Shown here one piece after another: positions 20,450 to 62,460 of a stretch of DNA of 64,000 bases. The notes under the pieces were generated by a model that did no database searches, had not been told where the DNA came from, and was given only the letters and a program-made list of their open reading frames with translations. Made by a program: the position numbers and the translations under genes. Source of the DNA: Macrostomum lignano (lineage: Eukaryota); contig NIVC01001159.1 in NCBI GenBank assembly GCA_002269645.1, positions 423,414-487,413 of the forward strand, read 5' to 3'. Position 1 is the stretch's first letter; each line of letters begins with the position of its first letter.

Positions 20450-20504
<55 letters not shown>

Positions 20505-20519
20505 GGCAGACAGACAGGC

Positions 20520-20558
<39 letters not shown>

Positions 20559-22590: not shown

Positions 22591-22699
22591 ATCCACCAGA
22601 CAATAAGTAGCTAGTGCAACAATTTCCTTAGCTCTATAGTGGCTTCTATAAAATTGGCATGACGCTTACTTTTACGTTTGAAATTGTGTATCTTTTATG

Positions 22700-25600: not shown

Positions 25601-25700
25601 TGTGGTGGCTTTTTAATGTTAGACATGGTGGCTCTTTAATGTTAGACATGGAGTTACATATATGTTTAACATGGTAGCTCTTTAATGTTTGAAATTGTGC
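22700..25700. repeat. 3-kb satellite, 23-bp unit ACATGGTGGCTCTTTAATGTTTG, with higher-order blocks
   Basis: Direct inspection; recurring variant monomers GATTCGGGGTTTTTT and CATGGAGTCACATATATG. Confidence 0.95.
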
Positions 25701-25761
25701 TTTTTGTGTTTAGCATTTTGTGTTTTTAAGGTTTTTGAATAAAAAAATCTTTTTGCACTAC

Positions 25762-34240: not shown

Positions 34241-34270
34241 AGCTTGTCAGCTGTTGAACAAAATGGCGGC
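34241..34270 (+). promoter_or_regulatory. TTGTCAG acceptor 12 nt upstream of the GPT-like ATG; the ATG lies within a YY1-type motif CAAAATGGCGGC
   Basis: Motifs seen directly; function inferred. Confidence 0.3.
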
Positions 34271-36332
34271 ATCAGTTGAGTCTGCCAGTTTGGCTGGCCA
34301 GAGTCAACAGGCAGATAAGGGCGAGTCAAAGCCGCTGACTTATCTGAGACAGGTCCTGGCCCTGATGCTGGACCCGGGCTTGCTGGCCAGGTCGGGCGCT
34401 GGTTGCTACCCGGCCGATGTTGTCGCTATGGCCAAACGCCTGCTAGCTGAGTTCCCCGGCGCCAGCCTGGGCTCCTACACGCACACTGGCGGCCAGTTCG
34501 CCGTCAGGCAGCTGTGCGCCGATTTTCTCGCTAGGCGCGACGGCGGCGCCAGCCAAGTCGATGACGTCATGGTGACCTGCGGCTCCGCCGAAGCCGTCCG
34601 CCTGCTACTCGAAGGCTTCGGTCGCAGACAATTGAAACCGGCGGCGGCGCTGATTCCGGCGCCAGGCCGGCCAATGTACGCCGCCTTCGCCCATCAGGTC
34701 GGCGTCCTGCCGGTACCGTACAGGCTGACCGCGCCACTGACTGCTGGCTGGCAGCTGGCCGAGACCGAGCTAGAGGCCGCCTATCGGGTCAGTCGTGTTC
34801 GTCCCTGTCACCGTCTGGCATCCCTGTGTAGTCCCTGTCACCTGGCATCCCTGTAGTCCCTGTCACCTGGCATCCCTGTGTAGTCCCTGTCACCTGGCAT
34901 CCCTGTAGTCCCTGTCACCTGGCATCCCTGTGTAGTCCCTGTCACCTGGCATCCCTGTAGTCGGTCACTCTTTCGCACCCGTGGAGCCCCTGGCGCCCCT
35001 GTCACCGTCTGTTACTAAGGGATCTCTGCGCCACTTTAAGGCTTTAACTACTCAGTAAGTAGTATTGTGTTGTACAAATCACTTCCGCATCCGTATTCGC
35101 TTTCAGTCGGCTGTGGAGGCAGGCGGTGAGCCGCGCATTCTGGTGCTGCTGAACCCCGGCCGCCCCACCGGCCAGCTGCTGACGGCTGCCTCCCTGCAGC
35201 TCGCCGCCGATTTTGCTCGCCGTCGCCGACTGTTTGTGATCTCCGACGAGACTCTGCAGTTCGCCCAGTTCGACAACGAGCAACAGTTCGTCAAATTTCG
35301 CCGATTGGTCCTTGAGCAGCAGGCGGCGCGGCCCGACCTGCCGCCGCTTGAAGTCGCCTCGGTGACCTCGCTTAGCGAAGGTACAAGCGATTAAGGTAGC
35401 GGACAGGCGGATGAGGGTAGCGGACAGGCAGATGAGGGTAGCGGACAGGCAGATGGGGGTAGCGGACAGGCAGATGAGGGTAGCGGACAGGCAGTTGAGG
35501 GTGATGGACAGGCAGATGAGAATAGCGGACAGGCGGATGAGGGTAGCGGACAGGCAGATGAGGGTAGCGGACAGGCAGATGGGGGTAGCGGACAGGCAGT
35601 TGAGGGTGATGGACAGGCAGATGAGAATAGCGGACAGGCGGATGAGGGTAGCGGACAGGCAGTTGAGGGTGATGGACAGGCAGATGAGAATAGCGGACAG
35701 GCGGATGAGGGTAGCGGACAGGCAGTTGAGGGTGATGGACAGGCAGATGAGGGTAGCGGACAGGCGGCTTAGAACTTGAAACCTGCGCGCCACCGTCAGG
35801 TCTGTGCGGTGGCGGCGATCCCGGACTTCGCGCTGGTTTCTGCGAGCTGCTAAATTTGCACCCGACTGCCAAGGCGGCGCTGCTGGCTGTGCTGTCCTGC
35901 ACCTCCTGTCCGCCTGTGCTCGGCCAGGCCGCCCTAGCCATGTCCGTGTCGGCCCCGCCCGGTCCGGACAGTCCGTCGCACGCTGGCTTTGTTGTCGAGT
36001 TGGCAGCCGCCGCTGGTTCGCTTCGACGAAAAGCCGCCCTGACTGGGCGCGCCCTGCTCGAATCTGGCGCGGCAATTTTGGCGCCGATGCCCAGCGCAGG
36101 CGGTCGAATCTGCCCGATGATGGCCGGACCGCCAGCTGGCTGGCTGAGAAGTGTCTCCGCCGCCGAGCCTGCCGATGCCGCCTATTGCCGGGCTGCTCTG
36201 CAAGTTGTTGCCGATAAAGACTGCCACAACTGGCTGCTTCCCGGGAGCCACTTTGGCCTCGAGCCGCGCCTTGCGGACGGAGGCTTCTTTGTTAGGTTTG
36301 CGATTTTATCTGCGTGCCAGCGATGCCAATGA
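34263..36332 (+). CDS. GPT: Alanine aminotransferase (GPT/ALT, class I PLP fold) homologue, probably catalytically inactive; exons 34263-34787, 35107-35380, 35800-36332 (possible extra last exon 36696-36741)
   Basis: KPLTYLRQVLAL, SLGSYT, ARRDGG, LLNPGRPTGQ, ISDE, GLRAGFCELLN, CPPVLGQ, PGSHFG and VRFAIL are collinear with ALT. Junctions CGG|GTCAGT..TTTCAG (phase 0) and GAAG|GTACAA..GTCAG (phase 1). Confidence 0.85.
34800..34960. repeat. 25/27-bp minisatellite GTCCCTGTCACCTGGCATCCCTGT(GT)A, GPT-like intron 1
   Basis: Direct inspection. Confidence 0.9.
35395..35768. repeat. 21-bp minisatellite GAGGGTAGCGGACAGGCAGAT, GPT-like intron 2
   Basis: Direct inspection. Confidence 0.95.
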
Positions 36333-36356
36333 CGGCCATGAGTAGCTGAAGAGACT

Positions 36357-36685
36357 GGGTAGCGGAGTAGAGGGCGGAGGGGGTAGCGGAGTAGAGGGCG
36401 GGGAGAGGGTAGCGGAGTAGAGGGCGGAGAGGATAGCAGAGTAGAGGGCGGAGAGGGTAGCGGAGTAGAGGGCGGAGGGGTAGCGGAGTAGAGGGCGGAG
36501 GGGGTAGCGGAGTAGAGGGCGGAGGGGTAGCGGAGTAGAGGGCGGAGAGGGTAGCGGAGTAGAGGGCGGAGAGGGTAGCGGAGTAGAGGGCGGAGAGGAT
36601 AGCACAGTAGAGGGCGGAGGGGGTAGCGGAGGAGAGGGCGGAGGGGGTAGCGGAGTAGAAGGCGGATGGGGTAGCGTCGGGGTAG
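36357..36685. repeat. 23/24-bp minisatellite GGGTAGCGGAGTAGAGGGCGGAG at the 3' end of the GPT-like gene
   Basis: Direct inspection. Confidence 0.95.
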
Positions 36686-36929
36686 TTGGCCACAGCATCT
36701 TGAAAGACTTTTTGAAGGGTTTTAAAGGCCAATGGTCGTGAATGCTAATCCTGTGCTAATCCGTGCCACCCCAACAACCGCCTGCAGCATCAGCATCAAA
36801 TGCTCGGAACGAGTTCTACTCGAACGATTGAATCGTCTGATTGCCTTTCATCGGAGCTTGCTGGAACGATACGCAGAATAAATTACTTTTACATAGTAGC
36901 ATCGTGTGATTTTTTGCTTCAAAATTCGT

Positions 36930-37321
36930 GTTTTGTCAGCCTAACTGAGAGTGGGGCCATCCAAAGTGAGAATCCTGCCTACGCTGACTGCGAAGGGCCT
37001 GGCTGCGTCCAGCCTAGTCTATGAGCCATATGAGTCTAGGATTTTAACTCTTTACTTTACTGTACTGTATCATCCAGTGTGTTCCTGTTTCCGTTATTCC
37101 GTTCAAGCTATTGGCTAGTCATATGGCTCAGAAGGTATAAAAATAAAGGAATACGACGCATAGACCAATCGATTCTCACATTGGATGGCTTTTTATCACT
37201 TTGCTTGTCCTTTATTGTCTATGGCCCATAGACTAAGGCTGCACGCAGCCGGGCCCTTCGCAGTCAGTGTAGGCGGGATTCTCACTTTGGATGGCTTTAT
37301 TCTCAGTTAGGCTGACAAAAC
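36930..37321. mobile_element. About 390-bp MITE-like element with about 95-bp TIRs, between the GPT-like and TRMT10C genes
   Basis: GTTTTGTCAGCCTAACTGAGA..GCCATCCAAAGTGAGAATCC.GCCTAC.CTGACTGCGAAGGGCC is mirrored at 37225-37321. No clear TSD. Confidence 0.7.
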
Positions 37322-37524
37322 TAATACTTATAAGCACTATGTTAGTGCATTTTTACATAAATAAATCGCATATAGCTGATTATAAGTTTACACACGCTCT
37401 TGCTGACTTCCTTGCTTATCTTACCACTGTCTTACTAATTCCAAGTTTCATAATGTGAAGACGTTAAACTGATGTTCAAGTCAGTTCTGTTAATCATTTT
37501 AAAGTTGCTTAAAGCGACCCTTAT

Positions 37525-37790
37525 CACTTGAATCAGCGCCCCTTAGCACCTGAATCAGCACTCCATAGCACCTGAATCAGCACTCCATAGCACCTGAATC
37601 AGCACTCCATAGCACCTGAATCAGCGCCCCTTAGCACCTGAATCAGCGCCCCTTATCACCTGAATCAGCGCCCCTTAGCACCTGAATCAGCGACCCTTAT
37701 CACCTGAATCAGCGACCCTTATCACCTGAATCAGCGACCCTCAGCACCTGAATCAGCGACCCTCAGCACCTGAATCAGCATTCCCTAGCA
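37525..37790. repeat. 22-bp minisatellite CACCTGAATCAGCGCCCCTTAG upstream of TRMT10C
   Basis: Direct inspection. Confidence 0.95.
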
Positions 37791-37908
37791 CCAAACTCGG
37801 CGACCCATATCAAAGGATTTGCCCTGGATAGAAAGATTAAATTGCTTTTTCCTACTCTAAATCTGATCAAGGAGAAACAAAAATTCAGTTACATATTTTC
37901 AGTTTCAG

Positions 37909-39088
37909 CGCTTGTCAGCAAAGGCGCCACTACTCGGGCGGCAGTGGAACTGTTGTTGTCAAGTCTGGCGCCGTCAGTGGCAGAGCAGCCGGGACAAAGC
38001 CAACGCCAATGCCCGGCTGCGGATGCTGCGAATTCTGTCGCCGCTGCTCGACTGCGTCTGCCCCGCCGCCCTGGACATGAGCCGGCCGGAGGCGGAGCGC
38101 CGACAGGCATTGATTAGCAGCGTGCTGGCAATACAGGTGAAATTTAAAGTCAGAATTCATTGTTTATTTAAGGTCAGGGTTTGGGGTTTATTAGAGGTCA
38201 GGGTTCGGGGTTTATTTAAGGTTAGGATTCAGTATTTATTTAAGGTCGGGTTTCAGGGTTCATTTAAGGTCAGGTTTCAAGGTTCATTTAAGGTTAGGAT
38301 TCAGCGTTTATTTAAGGTCAGGTTTCAGGGTTTATTTAAGATCAGGTTTCAGGGTTCATTTAAGGTCAGGTTTCAAGGTTTATTTAAGGTCAGGTTTCAG
38401 GGTTTATTTAAGGTCAGATTTCAGGGTTTATTAAGGTCAGGTTTCAGGGTTCATTTAAGGTCACGTTTCAAGGTTCATATAAGGTCCCGTTTCAGGATTT
38501 AGAGTTCAGGATTCAGAAGGTCAGGATTCAGAGTTCAAGTCAAGGTCAGGATTCAGGTCAAGGTCAGGGTTCAGGTCAAGGTCAGGATTCAGAGTTCAGG
38601 TCAAGGTCAGGATTCAGGGTTCAGTAAGGTCAGGGTTCAGGTCAAGGTCAAGATTCAATTCCAGCAGAGCTCGTGTCCGCAAAGTTCGTGATAAAACGCT
38701 ATCACTTCGCAGGCGCAGGCCATGATCTGCAACTCGCCGCCGCTGCAAGAGGTCGCCCCCGATCTCAACCGGTTCGACGAGGACGCCTGGCACGAGGCGC
38801 TATCGGCTACGGACTGTCTGGAGCTGCTGAACAATCTGCGATCGATTCGCCGGAGCCACGACGAGGACGACGCCGATGCGGCGGTCGGCGAAGAGGCCGA
38901 GTCGCCCAGCTTGGAGACCCCCAAGGACTGGCAGGAGCGCCCGCCGCTGCTGTTGGACGCAACCTGGGAGGAGCAGCTCAGCTATGCGGATGTCTTCAGC
39001 GTGAGTAGCATGAGTCTGTCTGCCTGTCTGTCTGTCTGTCTGCCTGTCTGTCTGTCTGCCTGCCTGTCTGTCTGTCTGTCTGCCTGTG

Positions 39089-39161
<73 letters not shown>

Positions 39162-39228
39162 GCGTGTCTGTCTGTCTGCCTGCCTGTCTGTCTGCCTGTC
39201 TTTCTGTCTGTCTGTTTGTCTGTCTGCC

Positions 39229-39269
<41 letters not shown>

Positions 39270-39284
39270 GCCTGTCTGTCTGCC

Positions 39285-39317
<33 letters not shown>

Positions 39318-39368
39318 GCCTGTCTGTCTGTCTGCCTGCCTGTCTGCCTGTCTGTCTGTCTGTCTGCC

Positions 39369-39405
<37 letters not shown>

Positions 39406-40026
39406 GGCTGCCTGTCTGTCTGACTTCTTTCCTTCCACTTGCCAGCACTCCCAGAAGCATCTGCCAATCAGTTATCGAGTCTTCCCGGCCATCCTCACCA
39501 CCCCCGCTCCCAGGTCGGCACGCAGCTCCGCCGCCTCCTCCGCTGCAACCGCCGGCACGGCCTGCCGTTCCTCCCGACCCTCTGCGGCCTGTCGCCTCAC
39601 GGCCGACTCCAGCGCCGTCTCGACGGTGCGCTGCAGTCGCCGCCGCCGCCAGCCACAGAATTTGTTCGAACATCGCGTCCTTGGCGCGAGATGGCCCCGC
39701 CTGGCCGCGCTCTGATTTTCATCTCCCCGGACGCGATGAAGCTACTGACCTGCTGGAGGCCCGACGCTGTCTACGTGCTGCCCTGCGCTGTCAATCGGAC
39801 CAGCGGTCTGAACCGGACCTTGGCCCGCCAGGCCGTCCGCTCCGGCGCCCTCTGCGTTCGCCTGCCGCTTGACGCCTTGCCCAAAACGGTGCGGCCCGAC
39901 CTGGAGGTCCTCGCCAGAGTTCTGCTAGCCATGCGCATCTCCCATGGTGCGCAGCAGGATTGGCGAATCATCTTGAACCGGCTGACAACCAGGCGTGACC
40001 CAAACTTCGATGCCGGCTTGGTCTGA
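37909..40026 (+). CDS. TRMT10C: TRM10-family SPOUT tRNA m1R9 methyltransferase, most like mitochondrial TRMT10C/MRPP1; exons 37909-38136, 38713-39000, 39514-40026; no ATG at the 5' end
   Basis: PPLLLDATWE, GTQLRRLLRCNRRHGLPF..LCGL, LIFISPDA, VYVL..V and VRLPLD match TRM10 motifs in order. Phase-0 GT-AG introns (CAG|GTGAAA, AGC|GTGAGT). Arg-rich, acid-poor N-terminus. Paralogue assignment (C rather than A/B) is inferred. Confidence 0.7.
38160..38650. repeat. 24-bp (TTTATTTAAGGTCAGGTTTCAGGG) then about 18-bp (GGTCAAGGTCAGGATTCA) arrays, TRMT10C intron 1
   Basis: Direct inspection. Confidence 0.9.
39012..39421. repeat. (CTGT)n microsatellite, TRMT10C intron 2
   Basis: Direct inspection. Confidence 0.95.
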
Positions 40027-40059
40027 GTGCTCTTTATGCACTGCTGCGCCCATTGCCCA

Positions 40060-40415
40060 GTGTGCACCCAGCCTCTCCCCGCCACCACCCCAGCCCAATG
40101 TACACTCAGCCTCTCCCCACCTCCACCGCAGCCCAGTGTACACTCAGCCTCTCCCCACCTCCACCCCAGCCCAGTGTACACTCAGCCTCTCCCCACCTCC
40201 ACCGCAGCCCAGTGTACACTCAGCCTCTCCCCGCCGCCACCACCCCAGCCCAGTGTACACTCAGCCTCTCCCCGCCACCACCCCAGCCCAGTGTACACTC
40301 AACCTCTCCCCGCCACCACCCCAGCCCAGTGTACACTCAACCTCTCCCCGCCGCCACCACCCCAGCCCAGTGTACACTCAACCTCTCCCAGCCACCAACC
40401 CCAGCCCAGTGTACA
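40060..40415. repeat. About 38-bp minisatellite CCCAGCCCAGTGTACACTCAGCCTCTCCCCGCCACCAC just after the TRMT10C stop
   Basis: Direct inspection. Confidence 0.95.
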
Positions 40416-40759
40416 CCATCCCAGTCTAATCTATCTAATACAGCATTTTTATTATTAAAGAATCGCGTTCTATTCGGGATTTGTGTACTTTTCATCAACA
40501 AGTGAAGTGTTCGCCTTTGGTTTGACTGATTAACTGTTGAAAATAAATGGCGCTATTTTCATTTGCGAATGCTAGTTTTAGAGTGCATAATTTTTAACAT
40601 ATTTGAAAAATTTTTGCCTTTTTTACATAATTTTACTTGTATTTAGATTATCTTTTAGCTTAATAAAATGCTAGAAAATGTTTATGCATTTCCGATATTG
40701 ATCAAAAATACTGTAACTTTACTGGGCTAGAATTATTTTCCGATTAGAAATATAATGAA

Positions 40760-43700
40760 TCTACTAGTACGTCCCTCCGATATGTATCGAATGTATAAAA
40801 AGTCTACTAGTACGTCCCTCCGATATGTATCGAATGTATAAAAAATCTACTAGTATTTCCCTCCGATATGTATCGAATGTATAAAAAATCTACTAGTACG
40901 TCCCTCCGATATGTATCGAAAGTATAAAAAATCTACAAGTATTTCCTTCCGATATGTATCGAAAGTATAAAAAATCTACTAGTATTTCCCTTCGATATGT
41001 ATCGAAAGTATAAAAAATCTACTAGTATTTCCCTCCGATATGTATCGAATGTATAAAAAATCTACTAGTATTTCCCTCCGATATGTATCGAATGTATAAA
41101 AAATCTACTAGTACGTCCCTCCGATATGTATCGAATGTATAAAAAATCTACTAGTATTTCCCTCCGATATGTATCGAATGTATAAAAAATCTACTAGTAT
41201 TTCCCTCCGATATGTATCGAATGTATAAAAAATCTACTAGTATTTCCCTCCGATATGTATCGAAAGTATAAAAAATCTACTAGTACGTCCCTCCGATATG
41301 TATCGAAAGTATAAAAAATCTACTAGTATTTCCCTCCGATATGTATCGAATGTATAAAAAATCTACTAGTACGTCCCTCCGATATGTATCGAAAGTGTAA
41401 AAAATCTACTAGTATTTCCCTCCGATATGTATCGAATGTATAAAAAATCTACTAGTATTTCCCTCCGATATGTATCGAATGTATAAAAAATCTAGTTTTT
41501 CCCTCCGATATGTATCGAATGTATAAAAAATCTACTAGTACGTCCCTCCGATATGTATCGAAAGTATAAAAAATCTACTAGTATTTCCCTCCGATATGTA
41601 TCGAAAGTATAAAAAATCTACTAGTATTTCCCTCTGATATGTATCGAATGTATAAAAAATCTACTAGTACGTCCCTCCGATATGTATCGAAAGTATAAAA
41701 AATCTACTAGTATTTCCCTCCGATATGTATCAAATGTATAAAAAATCTACTAGTATTTCCCTCCGATATGTATCGAATGTATAAAAAATCTACTAGTATT
41801 TCCCTCCGATATGTATCGAAAGTATAAAAAATCTACTAGTACGTCCCTCCGATATGTATCGAATGTATAAAAAATCTACTAGTATTTCCCTCCGATATGT
41901 ATCGAATGTATAAAAAGTCTACTAGTACGTCCCTCCGATATGTATCGAATGTATAAAAAATCTACTAGTATTTCCCTCCGATATGTATCGAATGTATAAA
42001 AAATCTACTAGTATTTCCCTCCGATATGTATCGAAAGTATAAAAAATCTACTAGTACGTCCCTCCGATATGTATCGAAAGTATAAAAAGTCTACTAGTAC
42101 GTCCCTCCGATATGTATCGAAAGTATAAAAAATCTACTAGTATTTCCCTCCGATATGTATCGAAAGTATAAAAAATCTACTAGTATTTCCCTCCGATATG
42201 TATCGAATGTATAAAAAATCTACTAGTATTTCCCTCCGATATGTATCTAATGTATAAAAAATCTACTAGTATTTCCCTCCGATATGTATCGAATGTATAA
42301 AAAATCTACTAGTATTTCTCTCCGATATGTATCGAATGTATAAAAAATCTACTAGTATTTCTCTCCGATATGTATCGAATGTATAAAAAATCTACTAGTA
42401 TTTCCCTCCGATATGTATCGAATGTATAAAAAATCTACTAGTATTTCCCTCCGATATGTATCGAATGTATAAAAAATCTACTAGTATTTCCCTCCGATAT
42501 GTATCGAATGTATAAAAAATCTACTAGTACGTCCCTTCGATATGTATCGAAAGTATAAAAAATCTACTAGTATTTCCCTCCGATATGTATCGAAAGTATA
42601 AAAAATCTACTAGTATTTCCCTCCGATATGTATCGAAAGTATAAAAAATCTACTAGTATTTCCCTCCGATATGTATCGAATGTATAAAAAATCTACTAGT
42701 ATTTCCCTCCGATATGTATCGAAAGTATAAAAAATCTACTAGTATTTCCCTCCGATATGTATCGAATGTATAAAAAATCTAGTTTTTCCCTCTGATATGT
42801 ATCGAATGTATAAAAAATCTACTAGTACGTCCCTCCGATATGTCTCGAAAGTATAAAAAATCTACTAGTACGTCCCTCCGATATGTATCGAATGTATAAA
42901 AAATCTACTAGTATTTCCCTCCGATATGTATCGAAAGTCTAAAAAATCTACTAGTACTTCTTTTCCGATATGTATCGAAAGTATAAAAAATCTACTAGTA
43001 TTTCCCTCCGATATGTATCGAATGTATAAAAAAATCTACTAGTACGTCCCTCCGATATGTATCGAAAGTATAAAAAGTCTACTAGTACGTCCCTCCGATA
43101 TGTATCGAATGTATAAAAAATCTACTAGTATTTCCCTCCGATATGTATCGAATGTATAAAAAATCTACTAGTATTTCCCTCCGATATGTATCGAATGTAT
43201 AAAAAATCTACTAGTACGTCCCTCCGATATGTATCGAAAGTATAAAAAATCTACTAGTACGTCCCTCCGATATGTATCGAATGTATAAAAAATCTACTAG
43301 TATTTCCCTCCGATATGTATCGAATGTATAAAAAATCTACTAGTACGTCCCTCCGATATGTATCGAAAGTATAAAAAGTCTACTAGTACGTCCCTCCGAT
43401 ATGTATCGAATGTATAAAAAATCTACTAGTATTTCCCTCCGATATGTATCGAATGTATAAAAAATCTACTAGTATTTCCCTCCGATATGTATCGAATGTA
43501 TAAAAAGTCTACTAGTATTTCCCTCCGATATGTATCGAAAGTATAAAAAATCTACTAGTACTTCCCTCCGATATGTATCGAAAGTATAAAAAATCTACTA
43601 GTACGTCCCTCCGATATGTATCGAATGTATAAAAAGTCTACTAGTACGTCCCTCCGATATGTATCGAATGTATAAAAAATCTACTAGTACGTCCCTCCGA

Positions 43701-44637
43701 TATGTCTCGAAAGTATAAAAAATCTACTAGTACGTCCCTCCGATATGTATCGAATGTATAAAAAATCTACTAGTATTTCCCTCCGATATGTATCGAAAGT
43801 CTAAAAAATCTACTAGTACTTCTTTTCCGATATGTATCGAAAGTATAAAAAATCTACTAGTATTTCCCTCCGATATGTATCGAAAGTATAAAAAATCTAC
43901 TAGTATTTCCCTCCGATATGTATCGAAAGTATAAAAAATCTACTAGTATTTCCCTTCGATATGTATCGAATGTATAAAAAATCTACTAGTACGTCCCTCC
44001 GATATGTATCGAAAGTATAAAAAATCTACTAGTACGTCCCTCCGATATGTATCGAATGTATAAAAAGTCTACTAGTACGTCCCTCCGATATGTATCGAAT
44101 GTATAAAAAATCTACTAGTATTTCCCTCCGATATGTATCGAAAGTCTAAAAAATCTACTAGTACTTCTTTTCCGATATGTATCGAATGTATAAAAAATCT
44201 ACTAGTATTTCCCTCCGATATGTATCGAATGTATAAAAAGTCTACTAGTACGTCCCTCCGATATGTATCGAATGTATAAAAAATCTACTAGTATTTCCCT
44301 CCGATATGTATCGAATGTATAAAAAATCTACTAGTACGTCCCTCCGATATGTATCGAATGTATAAAAAATCTACTAGTATTTCCCTCCGATATGTATCGA
44401 ATGTATAAAAAATCTGCTAGTATTTCCCTCCGATATGTATCGAAAGTATAAAAAATCTACTAGTACGTCCCTCTGATATGTATCGAAAGTATAAAAAATC
44501 TACTAGTATTTCCCTCCGATATGTATCGAATGTATAAAAAGTCTACTAGTATTTCCCTCCGATATGTATCGAAAGTATAAAAAATCTACTAGTACTTCCC
44601 TCCGATATGTATCGAAAGTATAAAAAATCTACTAGTA
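40760..44637. repeat. 3.9-kb homogeneous satellite, 43-bp unit CCCTCCGATATGTATCGAATGTATAAAAAATCTACTAGTATTT, about 90 copies
   Basis: Period measured between 40773 and 40816; ends 30 bp before the TMEM242 acceptor. Confidence 0.97.
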
Positions 44638-44667
44638 ATTCGCTTTCTCTCGCAATTCGAACTTCAG

Positions 44668-45081
44668 TCGGACCCGCTTGACAACGACGAGCGCCGGCCG
44701 GGAGTTGCGCCCGCCCTGCTGCTCGTCGGCACGGCGCTCACCTCAGCCGGCGCCGGTTTCGGCGCCACGGTCGCTTTGTCCCGGCGCAGGGAAGCCGCCG
44801 CTAGCGGCAGCGCCGGTGCCAGCCTTCGACACGGCGCCGACGGTACTCGCCTGGCGCTGCGCGCCCTCGGCTGGGGCAGCGCCGCCGCATTTGTTGGCGT
44901 CTCGGTCGTCACTGCCGCCTCCCTTGCCCTGGCTGGAGTTCGCAGCCTCACCGATCTGCGCGTTCCAGCGTCGCCCGCTTCGCCGAGCGGCGGTCGACGG
45001 GACTTCAAAACTGTTCGAGAGCTGGTGGACTTCCTGCTGAGCGAGGATGCCAGGATGGGCGGACTCGGGACAGATAGCTGA
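44668..45081 (+). CDS. TMEM242: TMEM242 (DUF1358) mitochondrial membrane protein; single coding block starting at a 3' splice site, with no upstream in-frame ATG
   Basis: LALRALGWGS motif as in TMEM242, preceded by the hydrophobic segment ALLLVGTALTSAGAGFGATVALSRRR and followed by a second TM segment. Acceptor CTTCAG at 44662-44667. 137 codons plus stop. Confidence 0.85.
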   Translation, partial: SDPLDNDERRPGVAPALLLVGTALTSAGAGFGATVALSRRREAAASGSAGASLRHGADGTRLALRALGWGSAAAFVGVSVVTAASLALAGVRSLTDLRVPASPASPSGGRRDFKTVRELVDFLLSEDARMGGLGTDS

Positions 45082-45109
45082 ATCACTGCCACATCTGCGA
45101 CTTTGGGTG

Positions 45110-45930
45110 CTTCACATGTGTGTGTTTCACCTGTGTGTGTTTCACCTGTGTGTGTTTCACCTGTGTGTGTTTCACCTGTGTGTGTTTCACCTGTGTGTGT
45201 GTTTCACCTGTGTGTGTTTCACATGTGTGTTTCACCTGTGTGTGTTTCACCTGTGTGTGCTTCACCTGTGTGTGTTTCACCTGTGTGCGTTTCACCTGTG
45301 TGTGTTTCACCTGTGTGTGTTTCACCTGTGTGTGTTTCACCTGTGTGTGTTTCACATGTGTGTGTTTCACCTGTGTGTGTTTCACCTGTGTGTGTTTCAC
45401 CTGTGTGTGTTTCACCTGTGTGTGTTTCACCTGTGTGTGTTTCACCTGTGTGTGTTTCACCTGTGTGTGTTTCACATGTGTGTTTCACCTGTGTGTGTTT
45501 CACCTGTGTGTGCTTCACCTGTGTGTGTTTCACATGTGTGTGTTTCACCTGTGTGTGTTTCACCTGTGTGTGTTTCACCTGTGTGTGTTTCACCTGTGTG
45601 TGTTTTACCTGTGTGTGTTTCACCTGTGTGTGTTTCACCTGTATGTGTTTCACATGTGTGTGTTTCACCTGTGTGTGTTTCACCTGTGTGTGTTTCACCT
45701 GTGTGTGTTTTACCTGTGTGTGTTTCACCTGTGTGTGTTTTACCTGTGTGTGTTTTACCTGTGTGTGTTTCACCTGTGTGTGTTTCACATGTGTGTGTTT
45801 CACCTGTGTGTGTTTCACCTGTGTGTGTTTTACCTGTGTGTGTTTCACCTGTGTGTGTTTTACCTGTGTGTGTTTCACCTGTGTGTGTTTCACCTGTGTG
45901 TGTTTCACCTGTATGTTTCACCTGTATGTT
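45110..45930. repeat. 15-bp minisatellite TGTGTGTGTTTCACC just after the TMEM242 stop
   Basis: Direct inspection. Confidence 0.95.
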
Positions 45931-46035
45931 TAACAGTCTTTTCAGCTGTCCCTTCATGCCTGTTTGTTTGTTATACTGTTTTACTGTCATTCAGGCTTTT
46001 ATAAACCAGCTTGCATAAAGATTATTTTCGTGTAA

Positions 46036-46226
46036 AATAAAACAATGAATACTGAATATTGAAGCAGCATTTATTATCACACAAAATATGTACGAAGTGG
46101 CACATTTTTATTGTTTCTGGGAGTTTCAATTAATTTGTTATACTTTTTAAAAGAATTCAATGATCTGAATAAAATAGCTTCTACGGACTACTTGCAGTAG
46201 ATAATGCGAATATCGTGCTGTTTCAG
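46036..46226 (+). promoter_or_regulatory. Candidate intercistronic module: AATAAA (46036, 46168) followed by a TGTTTCAG acceptor (46225-46226) 17 nt before the SDR ATG
   Basis: The motifs are seen directly; their role as poly(A) signal plus trans-splice site is inferred. Confidence 0.4.
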
Positions 46227-46243
46227 TTCCAAACGTTTCGAAA

Positions 46244-49200
46244 ATGCTCGCAATCTTAACTGAAGTGGTCTGCCTGCTCTGCCAGATTGTGGCTGACATC
46301 GCCAAGAGCGCCTACAACAATTTCACCCCAGCCTCCTGGCGCAGCAAAAACATCTCCGGCCAGACAGCCGTGGTTACTGGCGCTGGTAAGCGGCGGGTTT
46401 TACAAAGGAGTTACAAAGTGATTTTCTCGTACTTTTCAATCTGACTAACTGCCTACTCATAGTAGCTCCTTTCAATTTAGCCTGTGCCGGCTTTAAAATT
46501 AAGCGGCTATACTTAAAAGTTTATTGTTATTGTTCTAATCTACCGGTATTTTCTTTCAGATATGTATCGAAAGTAAAATATATCTACAATAAAGTATTTC
46601 CTGCCGATATGTATCGAGAGTATAATAAATCTACTAGTGTTTTCTTCCGATATGTAAATTTTGTAATTTTATATGTAAATTTTTACATGTAAATTTCAAA
46701 ACGGATATTCCAACTCGCAAAAGACCATAGCATCTGAGTTCACTACTCTGTCAGCTGGTCGATTTTTTATGTAACTATCAGTTTGTAATATTTTTGCATA
46801 TCGTTATATTGCTACTCTTAAGTAGGCGATTAAATATCACACATAAAACACAACATCTCTGGAACCGTCATCAGCCAGCGGCCTCGGCCGTCTGCTGGCC
46901 ATCCGGCTGTCCGGCCTCGGCTGCCGCCTCGTCCTCATCGACATCTCGACCGGCGTTGACGACGTGGCCGCCGAGTGCCGCTCGGCCGGCTCGCCAAAAG
47001 TGCAGGCGTACCAATGCGACCTGAGCTCGCGCGAGGTCATCTACGCCACCTGCGAGCGCCTGCTTGCCGACTTCGGCCAGCGCGTCGACATTCTCGTCAA
47101 CAACGCCGGCGTCGTCACTGGCCGGCCGTTTCTGGACTGTCCGGACGCCATGATTCGGCGAACCATGGCGGTGAACATCGAGGCTCATTTCTGGCTTTGC
47201 AAAGCTCTGCTGCCCGGCATGATCGAGCGGAACTGCGGCCACGTTGTCACCGTGGCCTCGGGCGCCGGCCAGGTGAGACCAGCATTGCTCAGCCCCCCCC
47301 CGATCCTTCAGTGACTGCAACCGCCACCTCAGCCCCCCCCTGATCCTTCAGTGGCTGCCACCGCCACCTCAGCCCCCCCCCTGATCCTTCAGTGGCTGCC
47401 ACCGCCACCTCAGCCCCCCCCCCTGATCCTTCAGTGACTGCCACTGCCACCTCAGCCCCCCCCCCGATCCTTCAGTGGCTGCCACCGCCACTTCAGCCCC
47501 CCCCCTGATCCTTCAGTAGCTGCCACCGCCACCTCATCCCCTCTGATCCTTCAGTAGCTGCCACCGCCACCTCAGCCCCCCCCCTGATCCTTCAGTGGCT
47601 GCTACCGCCACCTCAGCCCCCCCCCTGATCCTTCAGTAGCTGCCACCGCCACCTCATCCCCCCTGATCCTTCAGTAGCTGCCACCGCCACCTCAGCCCCC
47701 TCCCCCTGATCCTTCAGTGGCTGCCACCGCCACCTCAGCCCCCCCCCGATCTTTCAGTGGCTGCCACTGCCACCTCAGCCCCCCCCTGATCCTTCAGTGG
47801 CTGCCACTGCCACCTCAGCCCCCCCCCTGATCCTTCAGTGGCTGCCACCGCCACCTCAGCCCCCCATCCTTCAGTGGCCACCCCGATCCCTCAGTCCCTG
47901 ACCAGCGCTGACCAATGCTCGCCAACCATGCTCACTCCACAGCTCGGGGTGCCCAGCCTCTCTGACTACTGTGCCAGCAAGTTCGCCGCGGTTGGCTTCG
48001 ACGAATCATTGAAATTCGAGCTGGCCTCCCGCGGCAACGGCGGGGTGCGCACCACCTGCGTGTGCCCCTACTACATTAACACCGGCATGTTCGATGGCGT
48101 GGTCAGCCGCTTCCCCCGGCTGCTGCCCGTGATGAATCCCGACTATGTGATTGACAAGATGGTGCAAGCAATCCTCACCAACCAGGAGCTACTGGTGCTG
48201 CCGCGGCTGCTCTATTATACCAATATCATTCACAAGTGAGTCCAGGGTCTGCTTAGATCACAGTGGGCTCTCTGATTGTATCGTCTGGATGGGAAACCTC
48301 CCAGATCCTCAGTTGCTGGGCCAGCCTCCCAGATCCTCAGTTGCTGGGCCAGCCTCCCAGATCCTCAGTTGCTGGGCCAGCCTCCCAGATCCTCAGTTGC
48401 TGGTCGAGCCTCCCAGATCCTCAGTTTCTGGGCCAGCCTTCCAGATCCTCAGTTGCTGGGCCAGCCTCCCAGATCCTCAGTTGCTGGGCCAGCCTCCCAG
48501 ATCCTCAGTTGCTGGGCCAGGCACCCAGAGTGTCAGTTGCTGGGTCAGCCTTCCAGATCCTCAGTTGCTGGTCGAGCCTCCCAGATCCTCAGTTGCTGGG
48601 CCAGCCTCTCAGATCCTCAGTTGCTAGGCCAGCCTCCCAGAGCCTCAGTTGCTGGGCCAGCCTCCCAGATCCTCAGTTTCTGGGCCAGCCTTCCAGATCC
48701 TCAGTTGCTGGGCCAGCCTCCCAGAGTGTCAGTTGCTGGGCCAGCCTCCCAGAGTGTCAGTTGCTGGGTCAGCCTTCCAGATCCTCAGTTGCTGGTCGAG
48801 CCTCCCAGATCCTCAGTTGCTGGGCCAGCCTCTCAGATCCTCAGTTGCTAGGCCAGCCTCCCAGAGTGTCAGTTTCTGGGCCAGCCTCCCAGATCCTCAG
48901 TTTCTGGGCCAGCCTTCCAGATCCTCAGTTGCTGGGCCAGCCTCCCAGATCCTCAGTTGCTGGGCCAGCCTTCCAGATCCTCAGTTGCTAGGCCAGCCTC
49001 CCAGAGTGTCAGTTGCTGGGCCAGCCTCCCAGATCCTCAGTTGCTGAGACGCCACCTACCGATGCCCCAGCTCGTCGGCCTCAAGTAGAGTTGTAGTCGT
49101 CGCAGTTATTTAGCTTTCAGAGGGCTTTAGGCCCTGCTGCGAACCAATGCTCGGAGGCAGGCAATCCTGCCCATATCGCTGACTCCAGAGCAGGCACTCA

Positions 49201-49374
49201 TACAGAGTGCACAGCTGACTGTCGCACCGCCTGGCACCGCAAATTCCGCTGCCGCCCCCTTTCAGGATGGTGCCAGTTAGCGTCTCTTACAAGCTGCTGA
49301 ACTTCTTCGGCGTCTTCGACTCCATGGCCGGATTCCGCGGTCGCCAAGGCGGCGCCGACGCCAAGAAAGATTAA
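46244..49374 (+). CDS. SDR16C5: Short-chain dehydrogenase/reductase of the SDR16C type (retinol dehydrogenase / 17beta-HSD11-like), 313 aa; exons 46244-46385, 46875-47272, 47943-48235, 49266-49374
   Basis: VVTGAASGLG Rossmann motif across intron 1, ILVNNAGV, HVVTVAS, catalytic YCASK, CPYYINTGMF and an N-terminal hydrophobic anchor. Exon phases 1/0/2 are consistent; 942 nt in total. The symbol is a family-level assignment. Confidence 0.88.
47285..47880. repeat. About 40-bp minisatellite [43 protein letters not shown] intron 2
   Basis: Direct inspection. Confidence 0.95.
48290..49047. repeat. 28-bp minisatellite CCTCCCAGATCCTCAGTTGCTGGGCCAG, SDR intron 3
   Basis: Direct inspection. Confidence 0.95.
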
Positions 49375-55478: not shown

Positions 55479-58400
55479 ATGACGATGGCCAGCCGCTTGG
55501 ACTCCGGCCTGGACGAGCGCCTGGTCGAGGAGGTGGAGGGCGGCGAAGAAGACGAGGACGGCGATTTCGCGTCAGGCGCCGAGGTAGCCGCAGATCAGGA
55601 CGTCGACGCGTTCGACGACAATGAGCAATTCAGGGAGCAGCACGCCGTCAAAGTGATCCAGCGCTATTATCGGGGCTACAAATTGCGCAAAGATTTCGAT
55701 CAGATGCGCGACGATAAGCGCTGCTCTAGGCGCCTGGATCTTGGCGCTATTGGCGCCAATAGTGCGCTAGACATGTCCGATAGCGCCGTGGACGTCACTG
55801 CTTTGAGCATTGAGCAGAAGCAGCAACAGCAACACTCCAGCAGCAAATCTAAGAAGCAGCAACAGCAGCGCCACCAGCATCATCCAAGGCATCAGCATCG
55901 GCACAATTCCCTTGACGACATCCTTGTTGGCAATGACGAAGCCTTCCTGGCCTGGCAGCGCAGTCTGCAGCCTTTGGGAGTCGGCGGCGGCAATGGAAAC
56001 ACCGGAGGCGAAGGCGGCGGCATCAGCGGAGGCGACGCAACGGACGGCGATTCGCCCGGCCAGGACAGCGGGGTGCACAGCAGCGAGCAGCTGGTAGCTG
56101 CTGCGGCCTCCGCGTCCACCACCGTCGCTTCGTCGACGCCGTCGCGACCTTCGTCACATTCGCAGCAGTTTCACCATCAGCAGCCGCAGCGCCCGCCGCT
56201 TGTCAAGCGCTGCCACTCCTGCTCAGCCGCTGCCGCCGCCGCTGCCGCCGCTGGCGGAGCATCTTCAACTGGAACGCCTCCGTCTGCTGATTTCCTGTCT
56301 TCTGCTTTGCCGCAAAAGCAGCAAACTCAGAAAGCGCAGACTGCTCATAGTCAGCATCATCATCATCATCAGCAGGCTCAGATGCCGCCATCGGCATCCG
56401 TCCCAGCCATGGTCTCGGGCGCCGTTGGCAACGGGAGCTCCCCAGCTGTTGCCACGTGTCCCCGGCACCAGCAGCAGCAGCAGCCGGCCTCCTACGCCTC
56501 TCACTACAGTCACAACGATCGAGTTCGAAAGAGAACCTATCGGATCGGTTTGAACTTTTTTAATAGGTGCGATTTTTAATTGCTTTTTTTAAGCTCGTTG
56601 AAAATGGGGCCCTGGTTTTGAAACAGCGATGCCAGCTAGAGGGGGGGCGAAGTTCAGTAATTTCTGCACCATGTGTGTTTACCAGATTGTTCGGTCTATA
56701 AAGGTATCTCCGCTAAGTAAACATTGCCCACAGCCACTTGGTAACTGCTGCCAATTATAATTGGACTTCGCGCCTTGCTGTTAGTTTATATAGAACTTCC
56801 TCTTCTGAAACTTGAGGTTCAGTTTTAAACGCGGTCCAGTCCAATTCAATTCCAGGCTGTGCTGTGCTGTTAATTGTGAATATTATTTCACGTGAATTCA
56901 TTGAAAAGAGCTTGTCAAGATGAGATTTTAGTGCTGAAAATGAGCATTAGCTGTTTATAAAGTGGAGAGTAAAAGTATATAGGTAGATATAGAGAGTTAG
57001 ATGGGTTAAGTGTACAGATATAGATATGTTACTGTAGAAAAGTAGAGGGGAGTAGGGGTGAGAAGTAGAGGGGTAGGATGGAAAAGTAGAGGGGAGTAGG
57101 GGTGAGAAGTAGAGGGGTAGGATGGAAAAGTAGAGGGGAGTAGGGGTGAGAAGTAGAGGGGTAGGATGCAAAAGTAGAGGGGAGTAGGGGTGAGAAGTAG
57201 AGGGGTAGGATGCAAAAGTAGAGGGGAGTAGGGGTGAGAAGTAGAGGGGTAGGATGCAAAAGTAGAGGGGAGTAGGGGTGAGAAGTAGAGAGGTAGGATG
57301 CAAAAGTAGAGGGGAGTAGGGGTGAGAAGTAGAGGGGTAGGATGCAAAAGTAGAGGGGAGTAGGGGTGAGAAGTAGAGAGGTATGATGAAGAAGTAGAGG
57401 GAAGATGGAGAAGTAGAGTGATACGATTCTGGAGTAGAGGGATAGGATGGAGAAGTAGGCCTAGATAGTAGAAGAGGTGAGTAGAGAGAGGATAGAGAAG
57501 TAGGTACAGATAAATGCGTTTGGCCAAGTAAAGTTGCTGCTGGGCCTTGGCACAGTTTATAGTTATATTTAGTTAGTACCTGTCACCATGGCTCTGAATC
57601 GGTTGCGCAACACACCCAATGCCCGCTAATTCCAGGAAACCGGACAAGGGCATCCAGTTCCTGATTGGGCACCACTTCATCCAGAACAGCCCCTCAGCCG
57701 TGGCCAGATTCCTGCTGCACCGCAAAGGCCTCTGCAAGCAGGTGATCTCCAATTACCTCGGCCAGTGCCACGCCTCCGCCTTTGTAAACAGGGTGTGCGA
57801 CCATTTTTTAAACGACTTCGACTTTGCCAGCAAGCCTTTGGACATTGCGCTGAGGGAATTTCTACAGTTTATCGAGATTAAGGTATGCCACTGGTCTGTT
57901 GACTCCCTTTAACTAATCGGCCTCAGGCTCCCTTCCGCTGTCTGCCGCTCCCTTCCCCTTGTCTGCCGCTCCCTTTCCCCTGTCTGCCGCTCCCTTCCCC
58001 CTGTCTGCCGCTCCCTTTCCGCTGTCTGCCGCTCCCTTCCCCCTGTCTGCCGCTCCCTTCCCCCTGTCTGCCGCTCCCTTCCCCCTGTCTGCCGCTCCCT
58101 TACCCCTGTCTGCCGCTATCTTACCCCTGTCTGCCGCTATCTTACCCCTGTCTGCCGCTATCTTACCCCTGTCTGCCGCTCCCTTACCCCTGTCTGCCGC
58201 TATCTTACCCCTGTCTGCCACTCCCTTCCCGCTGTCTGCCGCTCCCTTCCCCCTGTCTGCCGCTCCATTCCCTTCCCCCTGTCTGCCGCTCCTTTCCCTT
58301 CCCCCTGTCTGCCGCTCCTTTCCCTTCCCCCTGTCTGCCGCTCCCTTCCCGCACAGCGCAGCCATGGCTAGGTAGTTCATCCCATTTCAGCGCTGGTGCA

Positions 58401-61949: not shown

Positions 61950-62460
61950 TAGGTGTGCTCACGGGGGTCAGTTGATTGATAGGTGTGCTCACGGGGGTCA
62001 GTTGATTGATAGGTGTGCTCATTGGGGTCAGTTGATTGATAGGTGTGCTCACGGGGGTCAGTTGATTGATAGGTGTGCTCATTGGGGTCAGTTGATTGAT
62101 AGGTGTGCTCACGGGGGTCAGTTGATTGATAGGTGTGCTCACGGGGGTCAGTTGATTGATAGGTGTGCTCATTGGTGTCAGTTGATTGACAGGTGTGCTC
62201 ATTGGGGTCAGTTGATTGATAGGTGTGCTCATTGGAGTCAGTTGATTGATAGGTGTACTCACGGGGGTCAGTTGATTGACAGGTGTGCTCACGGGGGTCA
62301 GTTGATTGACAGGTGTGCTCACTGGTGCCTCTTGATGAACAGGTGTGCTCACACAGGTCAATTGATTGACAGGTGTGCTCATTGGGGTCAGTTGATTGAC
62401 AGGTGTGCTCATTGGGGTCAGTTGATTGACAGGTGTGCTCATTGGGGTCAGTCGATTGAC
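61943..62460. repeat. 30-bp minisatellite TTGATTGATAGGTGTGCTCACGGGGGTCAG starting at the IQSEC stop codon
   Basis: Direct inspection. Confidence 0.95.

What the first reader, a model, noticed from the sequence alone, without database searches (positions are those of the whole stretch)
34241..49374. Candidate four-gene trans-spliced operon, inflated by satellites, with mitochondrial members
Seen: GPT-like, TRMT10C, TMEM242 and SDR are co-oriented. Each coding start is immediately preceded by a 3' splice site (34250, 37902/37908, 44667, 46226). The spacers are mostly tandem repeat or MITE and shrink to a few hundred bp without them. AATAAA lies 52 and 185 nt before the SDR acceptor. Established: SL trans-splicing resolves operons in nematodes, tunicates and flatworms; TRMT10C acts in mitochondrial RNase P and TMEM242 in ATP synthase c-ring assembly. 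Inference: one polycistronic unit transcribed divergently from USP9X.
Basis: partly seen in the sequence, partly recalled or inferred. Interest (0 to 1): 0.7.

Follow-up and report, generated by a model that had tools for sequence, protein, structure and literature searches.

The report
Flatworm trans-spliced four-gene operon
This stretch of the flatworm Macrostomum lignano genome carries four same-strand genes that look like one spliced-leader operon whose spacers are swollen by satellite DNA, an arrangement already described genome-wide for this species, so it is a sound but ordinary finding.

Summary
The window is Macrostomum lignano, identical to GenBank NIVC01001159.1. Window 34241-49374 carries four + strand genes:
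- an ALT/GPT-like gene
- a TRMT10C-like gene
- TMEM242 (DUF1358)
- an HSD17B11/13-like SDR

Each first exon starts at a 3' splice site (34250, 37902/37908, 44667, 46226).

Two genes have no usable genomic ATG. TMEM242 is open from its acceptor, and its first in-frame ATG is codon 130. The TRMT10C-like frame is open from both of its acceptors. The M. lignano spliced leader ends in ATG, and that ATG is in frame with both genes.

Stop-to-acceptor spacers are 1021, 4641 and 1145 nt. They shrink to about 365, 388 and 322 nt without satellites and one MITE. Two paralogous loci give about the same residue, although their arrays differ up to 12-fold in length.

GenBank locus tags derived from the published annotation put ALT and TRM10 under one transcriptional-unit prefix at this locus. 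At a paralogous locus, ALT, TMEM242 and SDR share a prefix.

Repeat-inflated operons were published for this species in 2021 (PMC8629364). I did not see SL reads, precursor RNA or a promoter directly. USP9X lies 13 kb away, so a shared divergent promoter is not shown.

The parts
34245..34250 (+). Candidate 3' splice acceptor (TGTCAG) 12 nt before the g1 ATG
   Evidence: Read. It is in frame with the SL ATG and would add MLLNK. It does not fit the published [T/C]TNCAG motif, so trans-splicing of g1 is unproven.
34263..36881 (+). g1: ALT/GPT-like gene of 462 aa. Exons are 34263-34787, 35107-35380, 35800-36295 and 36788-36881. The stop codon lies inside AATAAA 36877-36882.
   Evidence: Model. Pfam Aminotran_1_2 and ALT2 PDB E=7e-48. 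The paralog is PAA61052.1. At this locus GenBank holds PAA71537.1 (Mlig004283g1), an exon-3-skipping model.
36932..37321 (.). MITE-like insertion in spacer 1
   Evidence: Its 101-nt arms are 85% complementary. Both paralogs, L001 and L002, show the empty site.
37513..37779 (.). 22-bp satellite in spacer 1
   Evidence: It spans 267 bp here and 980 bp in L001.
37897..37908 (+). Two tandem acceptors (TTTCAG|TTTCAG|) ending at 37902 and 37908, both in frame with the g2 ORF
   Evidence: The GenBank 5'-partial CDS (PAA71538.1) starts FQRLS, exactly at 37903. In L001 the first AG is mutated to TG while the second is kept.
37903..40026 (+). g2: TRMT10C-like gene of 344-345 aa. Exons are 37903-38136, 38713-39000 and 39514-40026. 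The first genomic in-frame ATG is at codon 41.
40542..40667 (+). Two AATAAA hexamers (40542 and 40662), the likely g2 poly(A) signals, lying upstream of the large satellite
40751..44641 (.). 43-bp satellite of 90 copies that fills spacer 2 between the g2 poly(A) signals and the g3 acceptor
   Evidence: The same array spans only 315 bp in L001 and 436 bp in L002.
44662..44667 (+). g3 acceptor (CTTCAG)
   Evidence: The last 34-38 nt are 100% identical in all three loci.
44668..45081 (+). g3: TMEM242/DUF1358, a single exon. The ORF is open from the first base after the acceptor and has no in-frame ATG before codon 130. It is not annotated in GenBank at this locus.
   Evidence: The paralog is PAA61050.1, Mlig033698g3.
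45107..45929 (.). 15-bp satellite in spacer 3, within the g3 3' UTR
46036..46173 (+). Two AATAAA hexamers (46036 and 46168), 185 and 53 nt before the g4 acceptor
46221..46226 (+). g4 acceptor (TTTCAG), 17 nt before the g4 ATG
   Evidence: The GenBank 5'-partial CDSs start 2-8 nt after it in the three loci.
46227..49374 (+). g4: HSD17B11/13-like SDR of 313 aa with its ATG at 46244. Exons are 46227-46385, 46875-47272, 47943-48235 and 49266-49374. AATAAA follows at 49712.
   Evidence: GenBank entry PAA71539.1, Mlig009287g1.

Best explanation
The region is a spliced-leader operon of Macrostomum lignano. RNA polymerase II starts somewhere upstream of 34250 and transcribes g1 (ALT-like), g2 (TRMT10C-like), g3 (TMEM242) and g4 (SDR) as one precursor.

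Each upstream cistron is cleaved and polyadenylated at its AATAAA. Each downstream cistron receives the 35-nt SL at the acceptor that directly precedes its ORF.

Because the SL ends in AUG, it supplies the initiator methionine of TMEM242 and most likely of the TRMT10C-like protein. g1 and g4 use their own AUGs.

Satellite arrays and one MITE have expanded the intercistronic regions (and nearly every intron) without disturbing the short functional parts.

What is shown: the gene models, the acceptors, the reading frames, the repeat content and the comparison with the paralogs. What is inferred: SL addition at these sites, co-transcription, and a single promoter.
For: - **Organism and exact locus.**; L003 is identical to the window.
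- **SL sequence.** The SL ends in ATG (PMC8629364). A 3'-terminal AUG that can provide an alternative start codon is reported for all flatworm SLs described so far (Cheng et al. 2006, as cited in PMC12582326).
- **g3 start codon.** The nearest upstream in-frame stop is at 44590. There is no in-frame ATG until codon 130. The DUF1358 match starts at residue 7, and the conserved first transmembrane helix is at residues 17-35.
- **g2 start codon.** The ORF is open from both acceptors, and the GenBank CDS is 5'-partial, starting at 37903.
- **Acceptor motif.** g2, g3 and g4 fit the published [T/C]TNCAG motif.
- **Spacers.** Repeat-adjusted lengths are about 365, 388 and 322 nt here, 359/372/331 in L001 and 371/354 in L002, against the 1-kb criterion.
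- **Transcriptional-unit prefixes.** At this locus g1 is Mlig004283g1 and g2 is Mlig004283g2. At L001, ALT, TMEM242 and SDR are Mlig033698g5, g3 and g4. Prefixes are given to RNA-seq transcriptional units clustered at 95% identity (PMC5730564). I infer that unrelated genes share a prefix only if an assembled transcript spans them.
- **Gene order.** The same order is kept in the paralogous loci.
Against: - No SL-bearing read, long read or TSS data could be examined here.
- At this locus the published annotation splits the region into at least two units (Mlig004283 and Mlig009287) and has no TMEM242 gene. This could mean that transcription does not cross the 3.9-kb satellite.
- The g1 acceptor does not fit the SL motif.
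- The three loci are 95-98% identical in exons, so short reads and annotation may have been transferred between copies.
- The non-repeat spacer remnants (about 100-365 nt) could hold internal promoters.
- The L001 TMEM242 CDS starts 18 nt after the acceptor rather than at it.
Confidence: 0.68

Rival explanations
1. The region is split into two shorter polycistronic units, g1+g2 and g3+g4. The 3.9-kb satellite acts as a boundary, or an internal promoter feeds g3 and g4.
For: GenBank prefixes at this locus differ (Mlig004283 for g1 and g2, Mlig009287 for g4), and g3 is unannotated. The satellite unit contains a TATAAAA-like string.
Against: PMC8629364 states that RNA-seq units tend to split in repeat-rich intergenic regions for technical reasons. 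At L001, where the array is only 315 bp, ALT, TMEM242 and SDR share one prefix. g3 still needs an SL ATG.
Confidence: 0.14
2. The four genes are independent. Each has its own promoter in the spacer and each is SL trans-spliced as a monocistronic transcript.
For: About 60% of SL trans-spliced M. lignano genes are not assigned to operons. The spacers keep 100-365 nt of unique sequence. No promoter data are available.
Against: Spacer remnants diverge between paralogs like introns and UTRs (84-97% identity against 95-99% for exons), with no conserved block apart from the acceptors. The poly(A)-to-acceptor spacing fits the operon mode of the published distance distribution. Unrelated neighbouring genes share transcriptional-unit prefixes.
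Confidence: 0.14
3. The genes are conventional cis-spliced genes. Unrecognised 5' exons upstream supply the ATGs of g2 and g3, and the AGs are ordinary intron acceptors.
For: A sequence alone cannot tell a cis acceptor from a trans acceptor. Sharing of acceptors between cis- and trans-splicing is reported in parasitic flatworms (PMC12582326).
Against: RNA-seq-based GenBank models are 5'-partial and stop at or within 18 nt of the acceptors, with no upstream exon. The sequence upstream of g3 is 3.9 kb of satellite followed by the g2 3' UTR. The SL ATG is in frame for both ATG-less genes.
Confidence: 0.04

Closest known systems
Macrostomum lignano SL operons with repeat-inflated intergenic regions (Ustyantsev & Berezikov 2021, PMC8629364)
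   Same: Same species and the same 35-nt SL. The genes are co-oriented, the acceptors fit [T/C]TNCAG, and the intergenic distances collapse to a few hundred nt once tandem repeats and a transposon are subtracted. Four-gene operons are reported there.
   Different: Nothing differs in kind. This operon is not individually described (no paper mentions its gene identifiers). Its 3.9-kb satellite spacer is a large example. The GenBank annotation at this copy omits TMEM242.
Flatworm SL 3'-terminal AUG used as initiator methionine (Cheng et al. 2006 J Biol Chem, cited in PMC12582326)
   Same: TMEM242, and probably the TRMT10C-like gene, have no genomic AUG. Both are in frame with the SL AUG at their acceptors.
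   Different: As far as I know, the experiments were done in parasitic flatworms and a polyclad. Here the use of the SL AUG is inferred from the reading frame only.
Caenorhabditis elegans SL2 operons
   Same: Polycistronic precursors are resolved by 3' end formation plus SL trans-splicing. The functional intercistronic distance is about 100 nt.
   Different: M. lignano has a single SL type with no SL2-like specialisation (PMC12582326). Its spacers tolerate kilobases of satellite, whereas C. elegans spacers are compact.

Membership tests
M. lignano SL operon (criteria of PMC8629364) | Adjacent genes on the same strand, not interrupted by opposite-strand genes | tested here: met
   Four + strand genes with no called gene between them.
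M. lignano SL operon (criteria of PMC8629364) | Repeat-adjusted intergenic distance below 1 kb | tested here: met
   About 365, 388 and 322 nt from stop to acceptor. Similar values were found in two paralogous loci.
M. lignano SL operon (criteria of PMC8629364) | Downstream genes carry the SL (SL-containing reads at the first-exon acceptor) | not testable with these tools
   The evidence is indirect only. g2 and g3 are ATG-less ORFs in frame with the SL ATG. The GenBank CDSs are 5'-partial and start at or within 18 nt of the acceptors. The look-up for an SL-initiated TMEM242 product found nothing on record.
M. lignano SL operon (criteria of PMC8629364) | Acceptor motif [T/C]TNCAG at the outron/exon junction | tested here: met
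   g2 has TTTCAG twice, g3 has CTTCAG and g4 has TTTCAG. g1 has TGTCAG, which does not fit.
M. lignano SL operon (criteria of PMC8629364) | One precursor transcript from one promoter | tested here: inconclusive
   Shared transcriptional-unit prefixes (Mlig004283 g1/g2; Mlig033698 g3/g4/g5) imply spanning assembled transcripts. No promoter or long-read data were available.
SL-AUG-initiated flatworm mRNA | No genomic AUG for the conserved N-terminus; the acceptor is in frame with the SL's terminal AUG | tested here: met
   For g3, the first in-frame ATG is codon 130 and conserved helix 1 is at residues 17-35. For g2, the frame is open from both acceptors and the first ATG is codon 41.
TMEM242 / DUF1358 | Pfam PF07096 match above the gathering score, with two hydrophobic helices | tested here: met
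   49.8 bits against 23.4, covering profile positions 12-106 of 115. The alignment shows invariant helix residues.
TRMT10C (MRPP1) | TRM10-type SPOUT domain closest to TRMT10C | tested here: met
   The six best PDB hits are all TRMT10C, at E from 2.7e-6 to 1.1e-5. Fungal Trm10 scores E=0.0045. The match is weak: there is no Pfam-A hit, and the precomputed PF27710 hit is marked weak.
TRMT10C (MRPP1) | Conserved catalytic aspartate of the Trm10 family | tested here: not met
   Human FVDKS aligns with AVNRT, so Asp is replaced by Asn at codon 39793-39795. The catalytic role of this Asp is stated from my own knowledge. Methyltransferase activity is therefore doubtful.
Alanine aminotransferase (GPT/GPT2) | Fold-type I aminotransferase closest to ALT | tested here: met
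   ALT2 (3ihj) at E=6.7e-48 over residues 22-461.
Alanine aminotransferase (GPT/GPT2) | PLP Schiff-base lysine (S-x-S-K) | tested here: not met
   STSKG in ALT2 aligns with SLSEG, so Lys is replaced by Glu, also in paralog L001. The protein is likely not an active transaminase.
SDR16C-type short-chain dehydrogenase (HSD17B11/13-like) | adh_short domain with the TGxxxGxG and YxxxK motifs; closest to HSD17B11/13 | tested here: met
   PF00106 at E=2.4e-48. HSD17B13 at E=1.5e-59. TGAASGLG and YCASK are present in the model.

The most novel reading that the evidence does not exclude
The most novel reading still open concerns the satellite between g2 and g3. Its length varies about 12-fold between copies (3.9 kb here against 0.3-0.4 kb in the two paralogs). 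That length could act as a copy-specific throttle on downstream cistrons. On this reading, the operon copy with the 3.9-kb array has effectively lost TMEM242 and SDR co-expression, which would fit TMEM242 being unannotated only here. Tandem-repeat expansion would then be a way that polycistronic units are broken up or sub-functionalised after genome duplication. A second strand of the same reading: the operon couples an ALT-like protein lacking its PLP lysine, and a TRMT10C-like protein lacking its catalytic aspartate, with mitochondrial biogenesis genes.
Probability: 0.1. Interest if true: 0.45.

Novelty: already known. Interest (0 to 1): 0.15.

Why it matters
The finding shows that a reader working from sequence alone recovered a real feature of flatworm genome organisation. 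That feature is SL-resolved operons whose functional spacers of about 100-400 nt are hidden under kilobases of satellite.

For annotation it has two practical consequences.
- An intact TMEM242 gene at 44668-45081 is missing from the GenBank record at this locus.
- Two genes in the cluster can only be translated after trans-splicing, because the SL supplies their start codon. Gene finders that require an ATG will miss or truncate them.

It does not open a new question. The phenomenon, the motif, the distance criterion and the role of repeats were published for this species in 2021.

Tried and rejected
- **Rfam scan of the whole window.** It found no SL RNA or other RNA family. The 35-nt SL sequence is not in the window, even allowing 3 mismatches. 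The SL RNA gene is therefore elsewhere, as expected.
- **Direct evidence for SL-initiated products.** Looking up M+TMEM242 in the public assemblies found nothing on record. The protein clusters hold only NCBI and UniRef entries, with no RNA-seq contigs of M. lignano.
- **Other DUF1358 hits.** A Logan run and a TARA metagenome gave hits at only 44-46% identity, from unrelated samples. They say nothing about SL use.
- **My first g1 model.** It ended at 36332 with the 24-bp satellite in the 3' UTR. I rejected it after the paralog's 462-aa CDS revealed a fourth exon with the ALT-typical C-terminus.
- **Literature search for the four gene identifiers.** No paper mentions them. PMC8629364 has no supplementary files held as text.
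- **Conserved operons of parasitic flatworms.** In PMC12582326 I found no mention of these gene families.
- **L002 apparently lacking g1 exons 1-2.** This is explained by an LTR-retrotransposon-like insertion in intron 2 that fills the fetched flank, not by a proven truncation.
- **The sigma-70 promoter/terminator scanner.** I did not use it, because it does not apply to an animal genome.

Full report
**What the sequence is**

The window is eukaryotic. It has GC-rich exons, AT-rich intergenic DNA and many satellites. The product of the second gene is 98% identical to a Macrostomum lignano protein. A cluster member, PAA71538.1, is identical to the window's product. The 22-kb stretch fetched around that gene from GenBank NIVC01001159.1 (assembly GCA_002269645.1, Mlig_3_7) is base-for-base identical to window 27903-50026. 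The organism and locus are therefore settled.

**Gene models**

All four genes have canonical GT-AG introns and uninterrupted frames.

- **g1** is 462 aa. Its exons are 34263-34787, 35107-35380, 35800-36295 and 36788-36881. It is ALT/GPT-like, matching Pfam Aminotran_1_2 and human ALT2 at E=7e-48 over the full length. My first model missed the last exon. The 462-aa CDS of the paralog showed that the 24-bp satellite at 36357-36676 is intronic. It also showed that the stop codon sits inside the AATAAA at 36877-36882.
- **g2** has exons 37903/37909-38136, 38713-39000 and 39514-40026. It has a TRM10-type SPOUT domain. Its six best PDB matches are all human TRMT10C, at E from 2.7e-6 to 1.1e-5, against 0.0045 for fungal Trm10. 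The match is weak, and Pfam-A gave nothing.
- **g3** is a single exon at 44668-45081. It is TMEM242, matching DUF1358 at 49.8 bits against a cut-off of 23.4.
- **g4** is 313 aa, with its ATG at 46244 and its stop at 49374. It is an HSD17B11/13-like SDR.

Three qualifications apply:
- The SDR is not of a mitochondrial type.
- The ALT-like protein has Glu in place of the PLP-binding Lys.
- The TRM10 domain has Asn in place of the conserved Asp.

**Acceptors and reading frames**

AG dinucleotides end at 34250, 37902, 37908, 44667 and 46226. The published M. lignano SL is CGGTCTCTTACTGCGAAGACTCAATTTATTGCATG, and the published SL-acceptor motif is [T/C]TNCAG (PMC8629364). The acceptors of g2, g3 and g4 fit that motif, but g1 (TGTCAG) does not. 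The motif occurs 3.1 times per kb on this strand.

The strongest evidence in the sequence concerns start codons.

- **g3.** The ORF is bounded by a stop at 44590. It runs through the acceptor and has no in-frame ATG until codon 130 of 137. The DUF1358 match begins at residue 7, and the invariant first-helix residues lie at positions 17-35. The protein cannot start at a genomic AUG. The SL's terminal AUG, joined at 44667|44668, is in frame and would give MSDPLDND....
- **g2.** The frame is open from both tandem acceptors, which are 6 nt apart and both in frame. The first genomic ATG is codon 41. The GenBank CDS is flagged partial and begins FQRLS, exactly at 37903.
- **g1 and g4.** Both have their own ATGs, 12 and 17 nt after the acceptor. 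In g4 the SL AUG opens an 11-codon upstream ORF.

A 3'-terminal ATG that can provide an alternative start codon is reported for all flatworm SLs described so far (Cheng et al. 2006, cited in PMC12582326).

**Spacers**

The table gives stop-to-acceptor lengths and their content at this locus.

| Spacer | Total (nt) | Tandem repeat (nt) | Other insertion | Unique residue (nt) |
|---|---|---|---|---|
| g1-g2 | 1021 | 267 | MITE-like, about 390 bp | about 365 |
| g2-g3 | 4641 | 4253 | none | 388 |
| g3-g4 | 1145 | 823 | none | 322 |

The MITE-like element lies at 36932-37321 and has 101-nt inverted arms. Both paralogs show the empty site.

Two paralogous loci carry the same genes in the same order. 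They are L001 (NIVC01002077.1) and L002 (NIVC01000546.1). Their exons are 95-98.6% identical to the window's. Their arrays differ greatly in length. The 43-bp satellite spans 3891 bp here, against 315 bp in L001 and 436 bp in L002. The unique residues are nearly constant, at 359/372/331 nt in L001 and 371/354 nt in L002.

Measured from the likely poly(A) signals, the non-repeat distance to the next acceptor is:
- about 365 nt for g1 to g2;
- about 110 nt for g2 to g3, because the AATAAA hexamers at 40542 and 40662 lie before the satellite;
- 185 or 53 nt for g3 to g4.

These values fit the published picture. In PMC8629364, repeat-adjusted distances between trans-spliced genes peak near 100 bp, and 1 kb is the operon threshold.

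Tandem repeats make up 56% of 34241-49374, and coding sequence makes up 25%. Satellites also sit in nearly every intron. The inflation is therefore a property of the genome, not of the operon.

**Evidence for co-transcription**

I could not examine reads. Indirect evidence comes from the GenBank locus tags, which derive from the Mlig_3_7 annotation.

In that annotation, RNA-seq-assembled "transcriptional units" were clustered at 95% identity and given a common prefix. They were then cut into genes at SL and poly(A) peaks (PMC5730564).

- At this locus, g1 is Mlig004283g1 and g2 is Mlig004283g2.
- At L001, ALT is Mlig033698g5, TMEM242 is Mlig033698g3 and SDR is Mlig033698g4.

I infer that unrelated genes can share a prefix only if some assembled unit spans them. 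If so, a precursor-like transcript covering ALT through SDR was assembled for at least one copy.

At this copy the SDR carries another prefix (Mlig009287g1), and TMEM242 is not annotated at all. PMC8629364 notes that such units tend to break in repeat-rich intergenic regions. A real break at the 3.9-kb satellite cannot be excluded.

**What is not supported**

USP9X (UCH plus DUF3517) is on the minus strand. Its first coding exon ends near 20931. That is 13.3 kb from the g1 acceptor, across AT-rich DNA and a 3-kb 23-bp satellite. The orientation is divergent, but nothing indicates a shared promoter.

Whether g1 itself is trans-spliced is open. The spacer remnants diverge between paralogs like introns and UTRs, at 84-97% identity. 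No conserved promoter-like block stands out, but the copies are too recent for this to be decisive.

**Comparison with what is known, and verdict**

This is an instance of the M. lignano SL operons described by Ustyantsev and Berezikov (2021). That paper explicitly reports that repeats inflate operon spacers, and it shows a four-gene example.

- **Criteria met:** same-strand adjacency, repeat-adjusted distance and acceptor motif.
- **Criteria supported only indirectly:** SL reads and a single precursor.

I rate a single four-gene operon at about 0.68. The rivals are a split into two units (0.14), independent promoters with monocistronic trans-splicing (0.14) and hidden cis 5' exons (0.04).

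Interest is low (0.15). The useful by-products are an unannotated TMEM242 copy, two obligately SL-initiated ORFs, and two probable pseudoenzymes in the cluster.

Noticed in passing
window 35371-35380 / 35800 (g1 exon 2/3 junction): The ALT-like protein has Glu where ALT2 has the PLP Schiff-base Lys (SLSEG against STSKG). The paralog L001 shows the same change. It is probably a catalytically dead or re-purposed aminotransferase.
   Followed up: partly
window 39793-39795 (g2 exon 3): The TRM10 domain has Asn (AVNRT) where human TRMT10C has the conserved Asp (FVDKS). All three paralogs carry the Asn. Methyltransferase activity may be lost while a structural role in mitochondrial RNase P remains.
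   Followed up: partly
window 44668-45081: An intact TMEM242 ORF has no CDS in GenBank NIVC01001159.1. The accessions PAA71538 and PAA71539 flank it consecutively. The ORF is annotated only in the paralog NIVC01002077.1. It is also intact but uncalled in L002 at 13164-13583.
   Followed up: yes
window 34263-36881: The GenBank model at this locus (PAA71537.1, 280 aa) joins exon 2 directly to exon 4 out of frame, skipping exon 3. This is either a mis-model or an exon-skipping isoform.
   Followed up: partly
window 36932-37321: A MITE-like element of about 390 bp has 101-nt terminal inverted arms. It is inserted about 50 nt after the g1 poly(A) signal. Both paralogs show the empty site.
   Followed up: yes
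window 40751-44641 and 46550-46650: The 43-bp satellite (90 copies) has degenerate relatives inside g4 intron 1. In L001 and L002 some units contain AATAAA, which could act as cryptic poly(A) signals inside the spacer.
   Followed up: partly
L001 9990-10006 (equivalent to window 37895-37908): In paralog L001 the first of the two tandem g2 acceptors is mutated (CAG to CTG) and the second is kept. The GenBank CDS there nevertheless starts at the first position, which suggests annotation transfer between copies.
   Followed up: partly
L002 74-5304: A long gag-pol-like ORF (1489 aa) plus an integrase-like ORF, both retrotransposon-like by eye with no family search run, lie just upstream of where homology to g1 intron 2 begins. 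g1 exons 1-2 fall outside the fetched flank.
   Followed up: partly
window 4400-20931 (- strand): A USP9X-like gene (UCH plus DUF3517) has large intronic satellites. A 3-kb 23-bp satellite lies at 22669-25711, between it and g1.
   Followed up: partly
window 55479-62000 (+ strand): A co-oriented IQ plus Sec7 (IQSEC/BRAG-like) gene starts 5.7 kb after the SDR poly(A) signal. A possible acceptor (CCTGTCAG) lies near 55370. I did not test whether it belongs to the same unit. Homology to L001 and L002 stops at 51024.
   Followed up: no
window 34241-49374: Nearly every intron carries its own private satellite, with unit lengths of 27, 21, 24, 24, 4, 41 and 28 bp. Tandem repeats make up 56% of the locus and coding sequence 25%.
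   Followed up: yes
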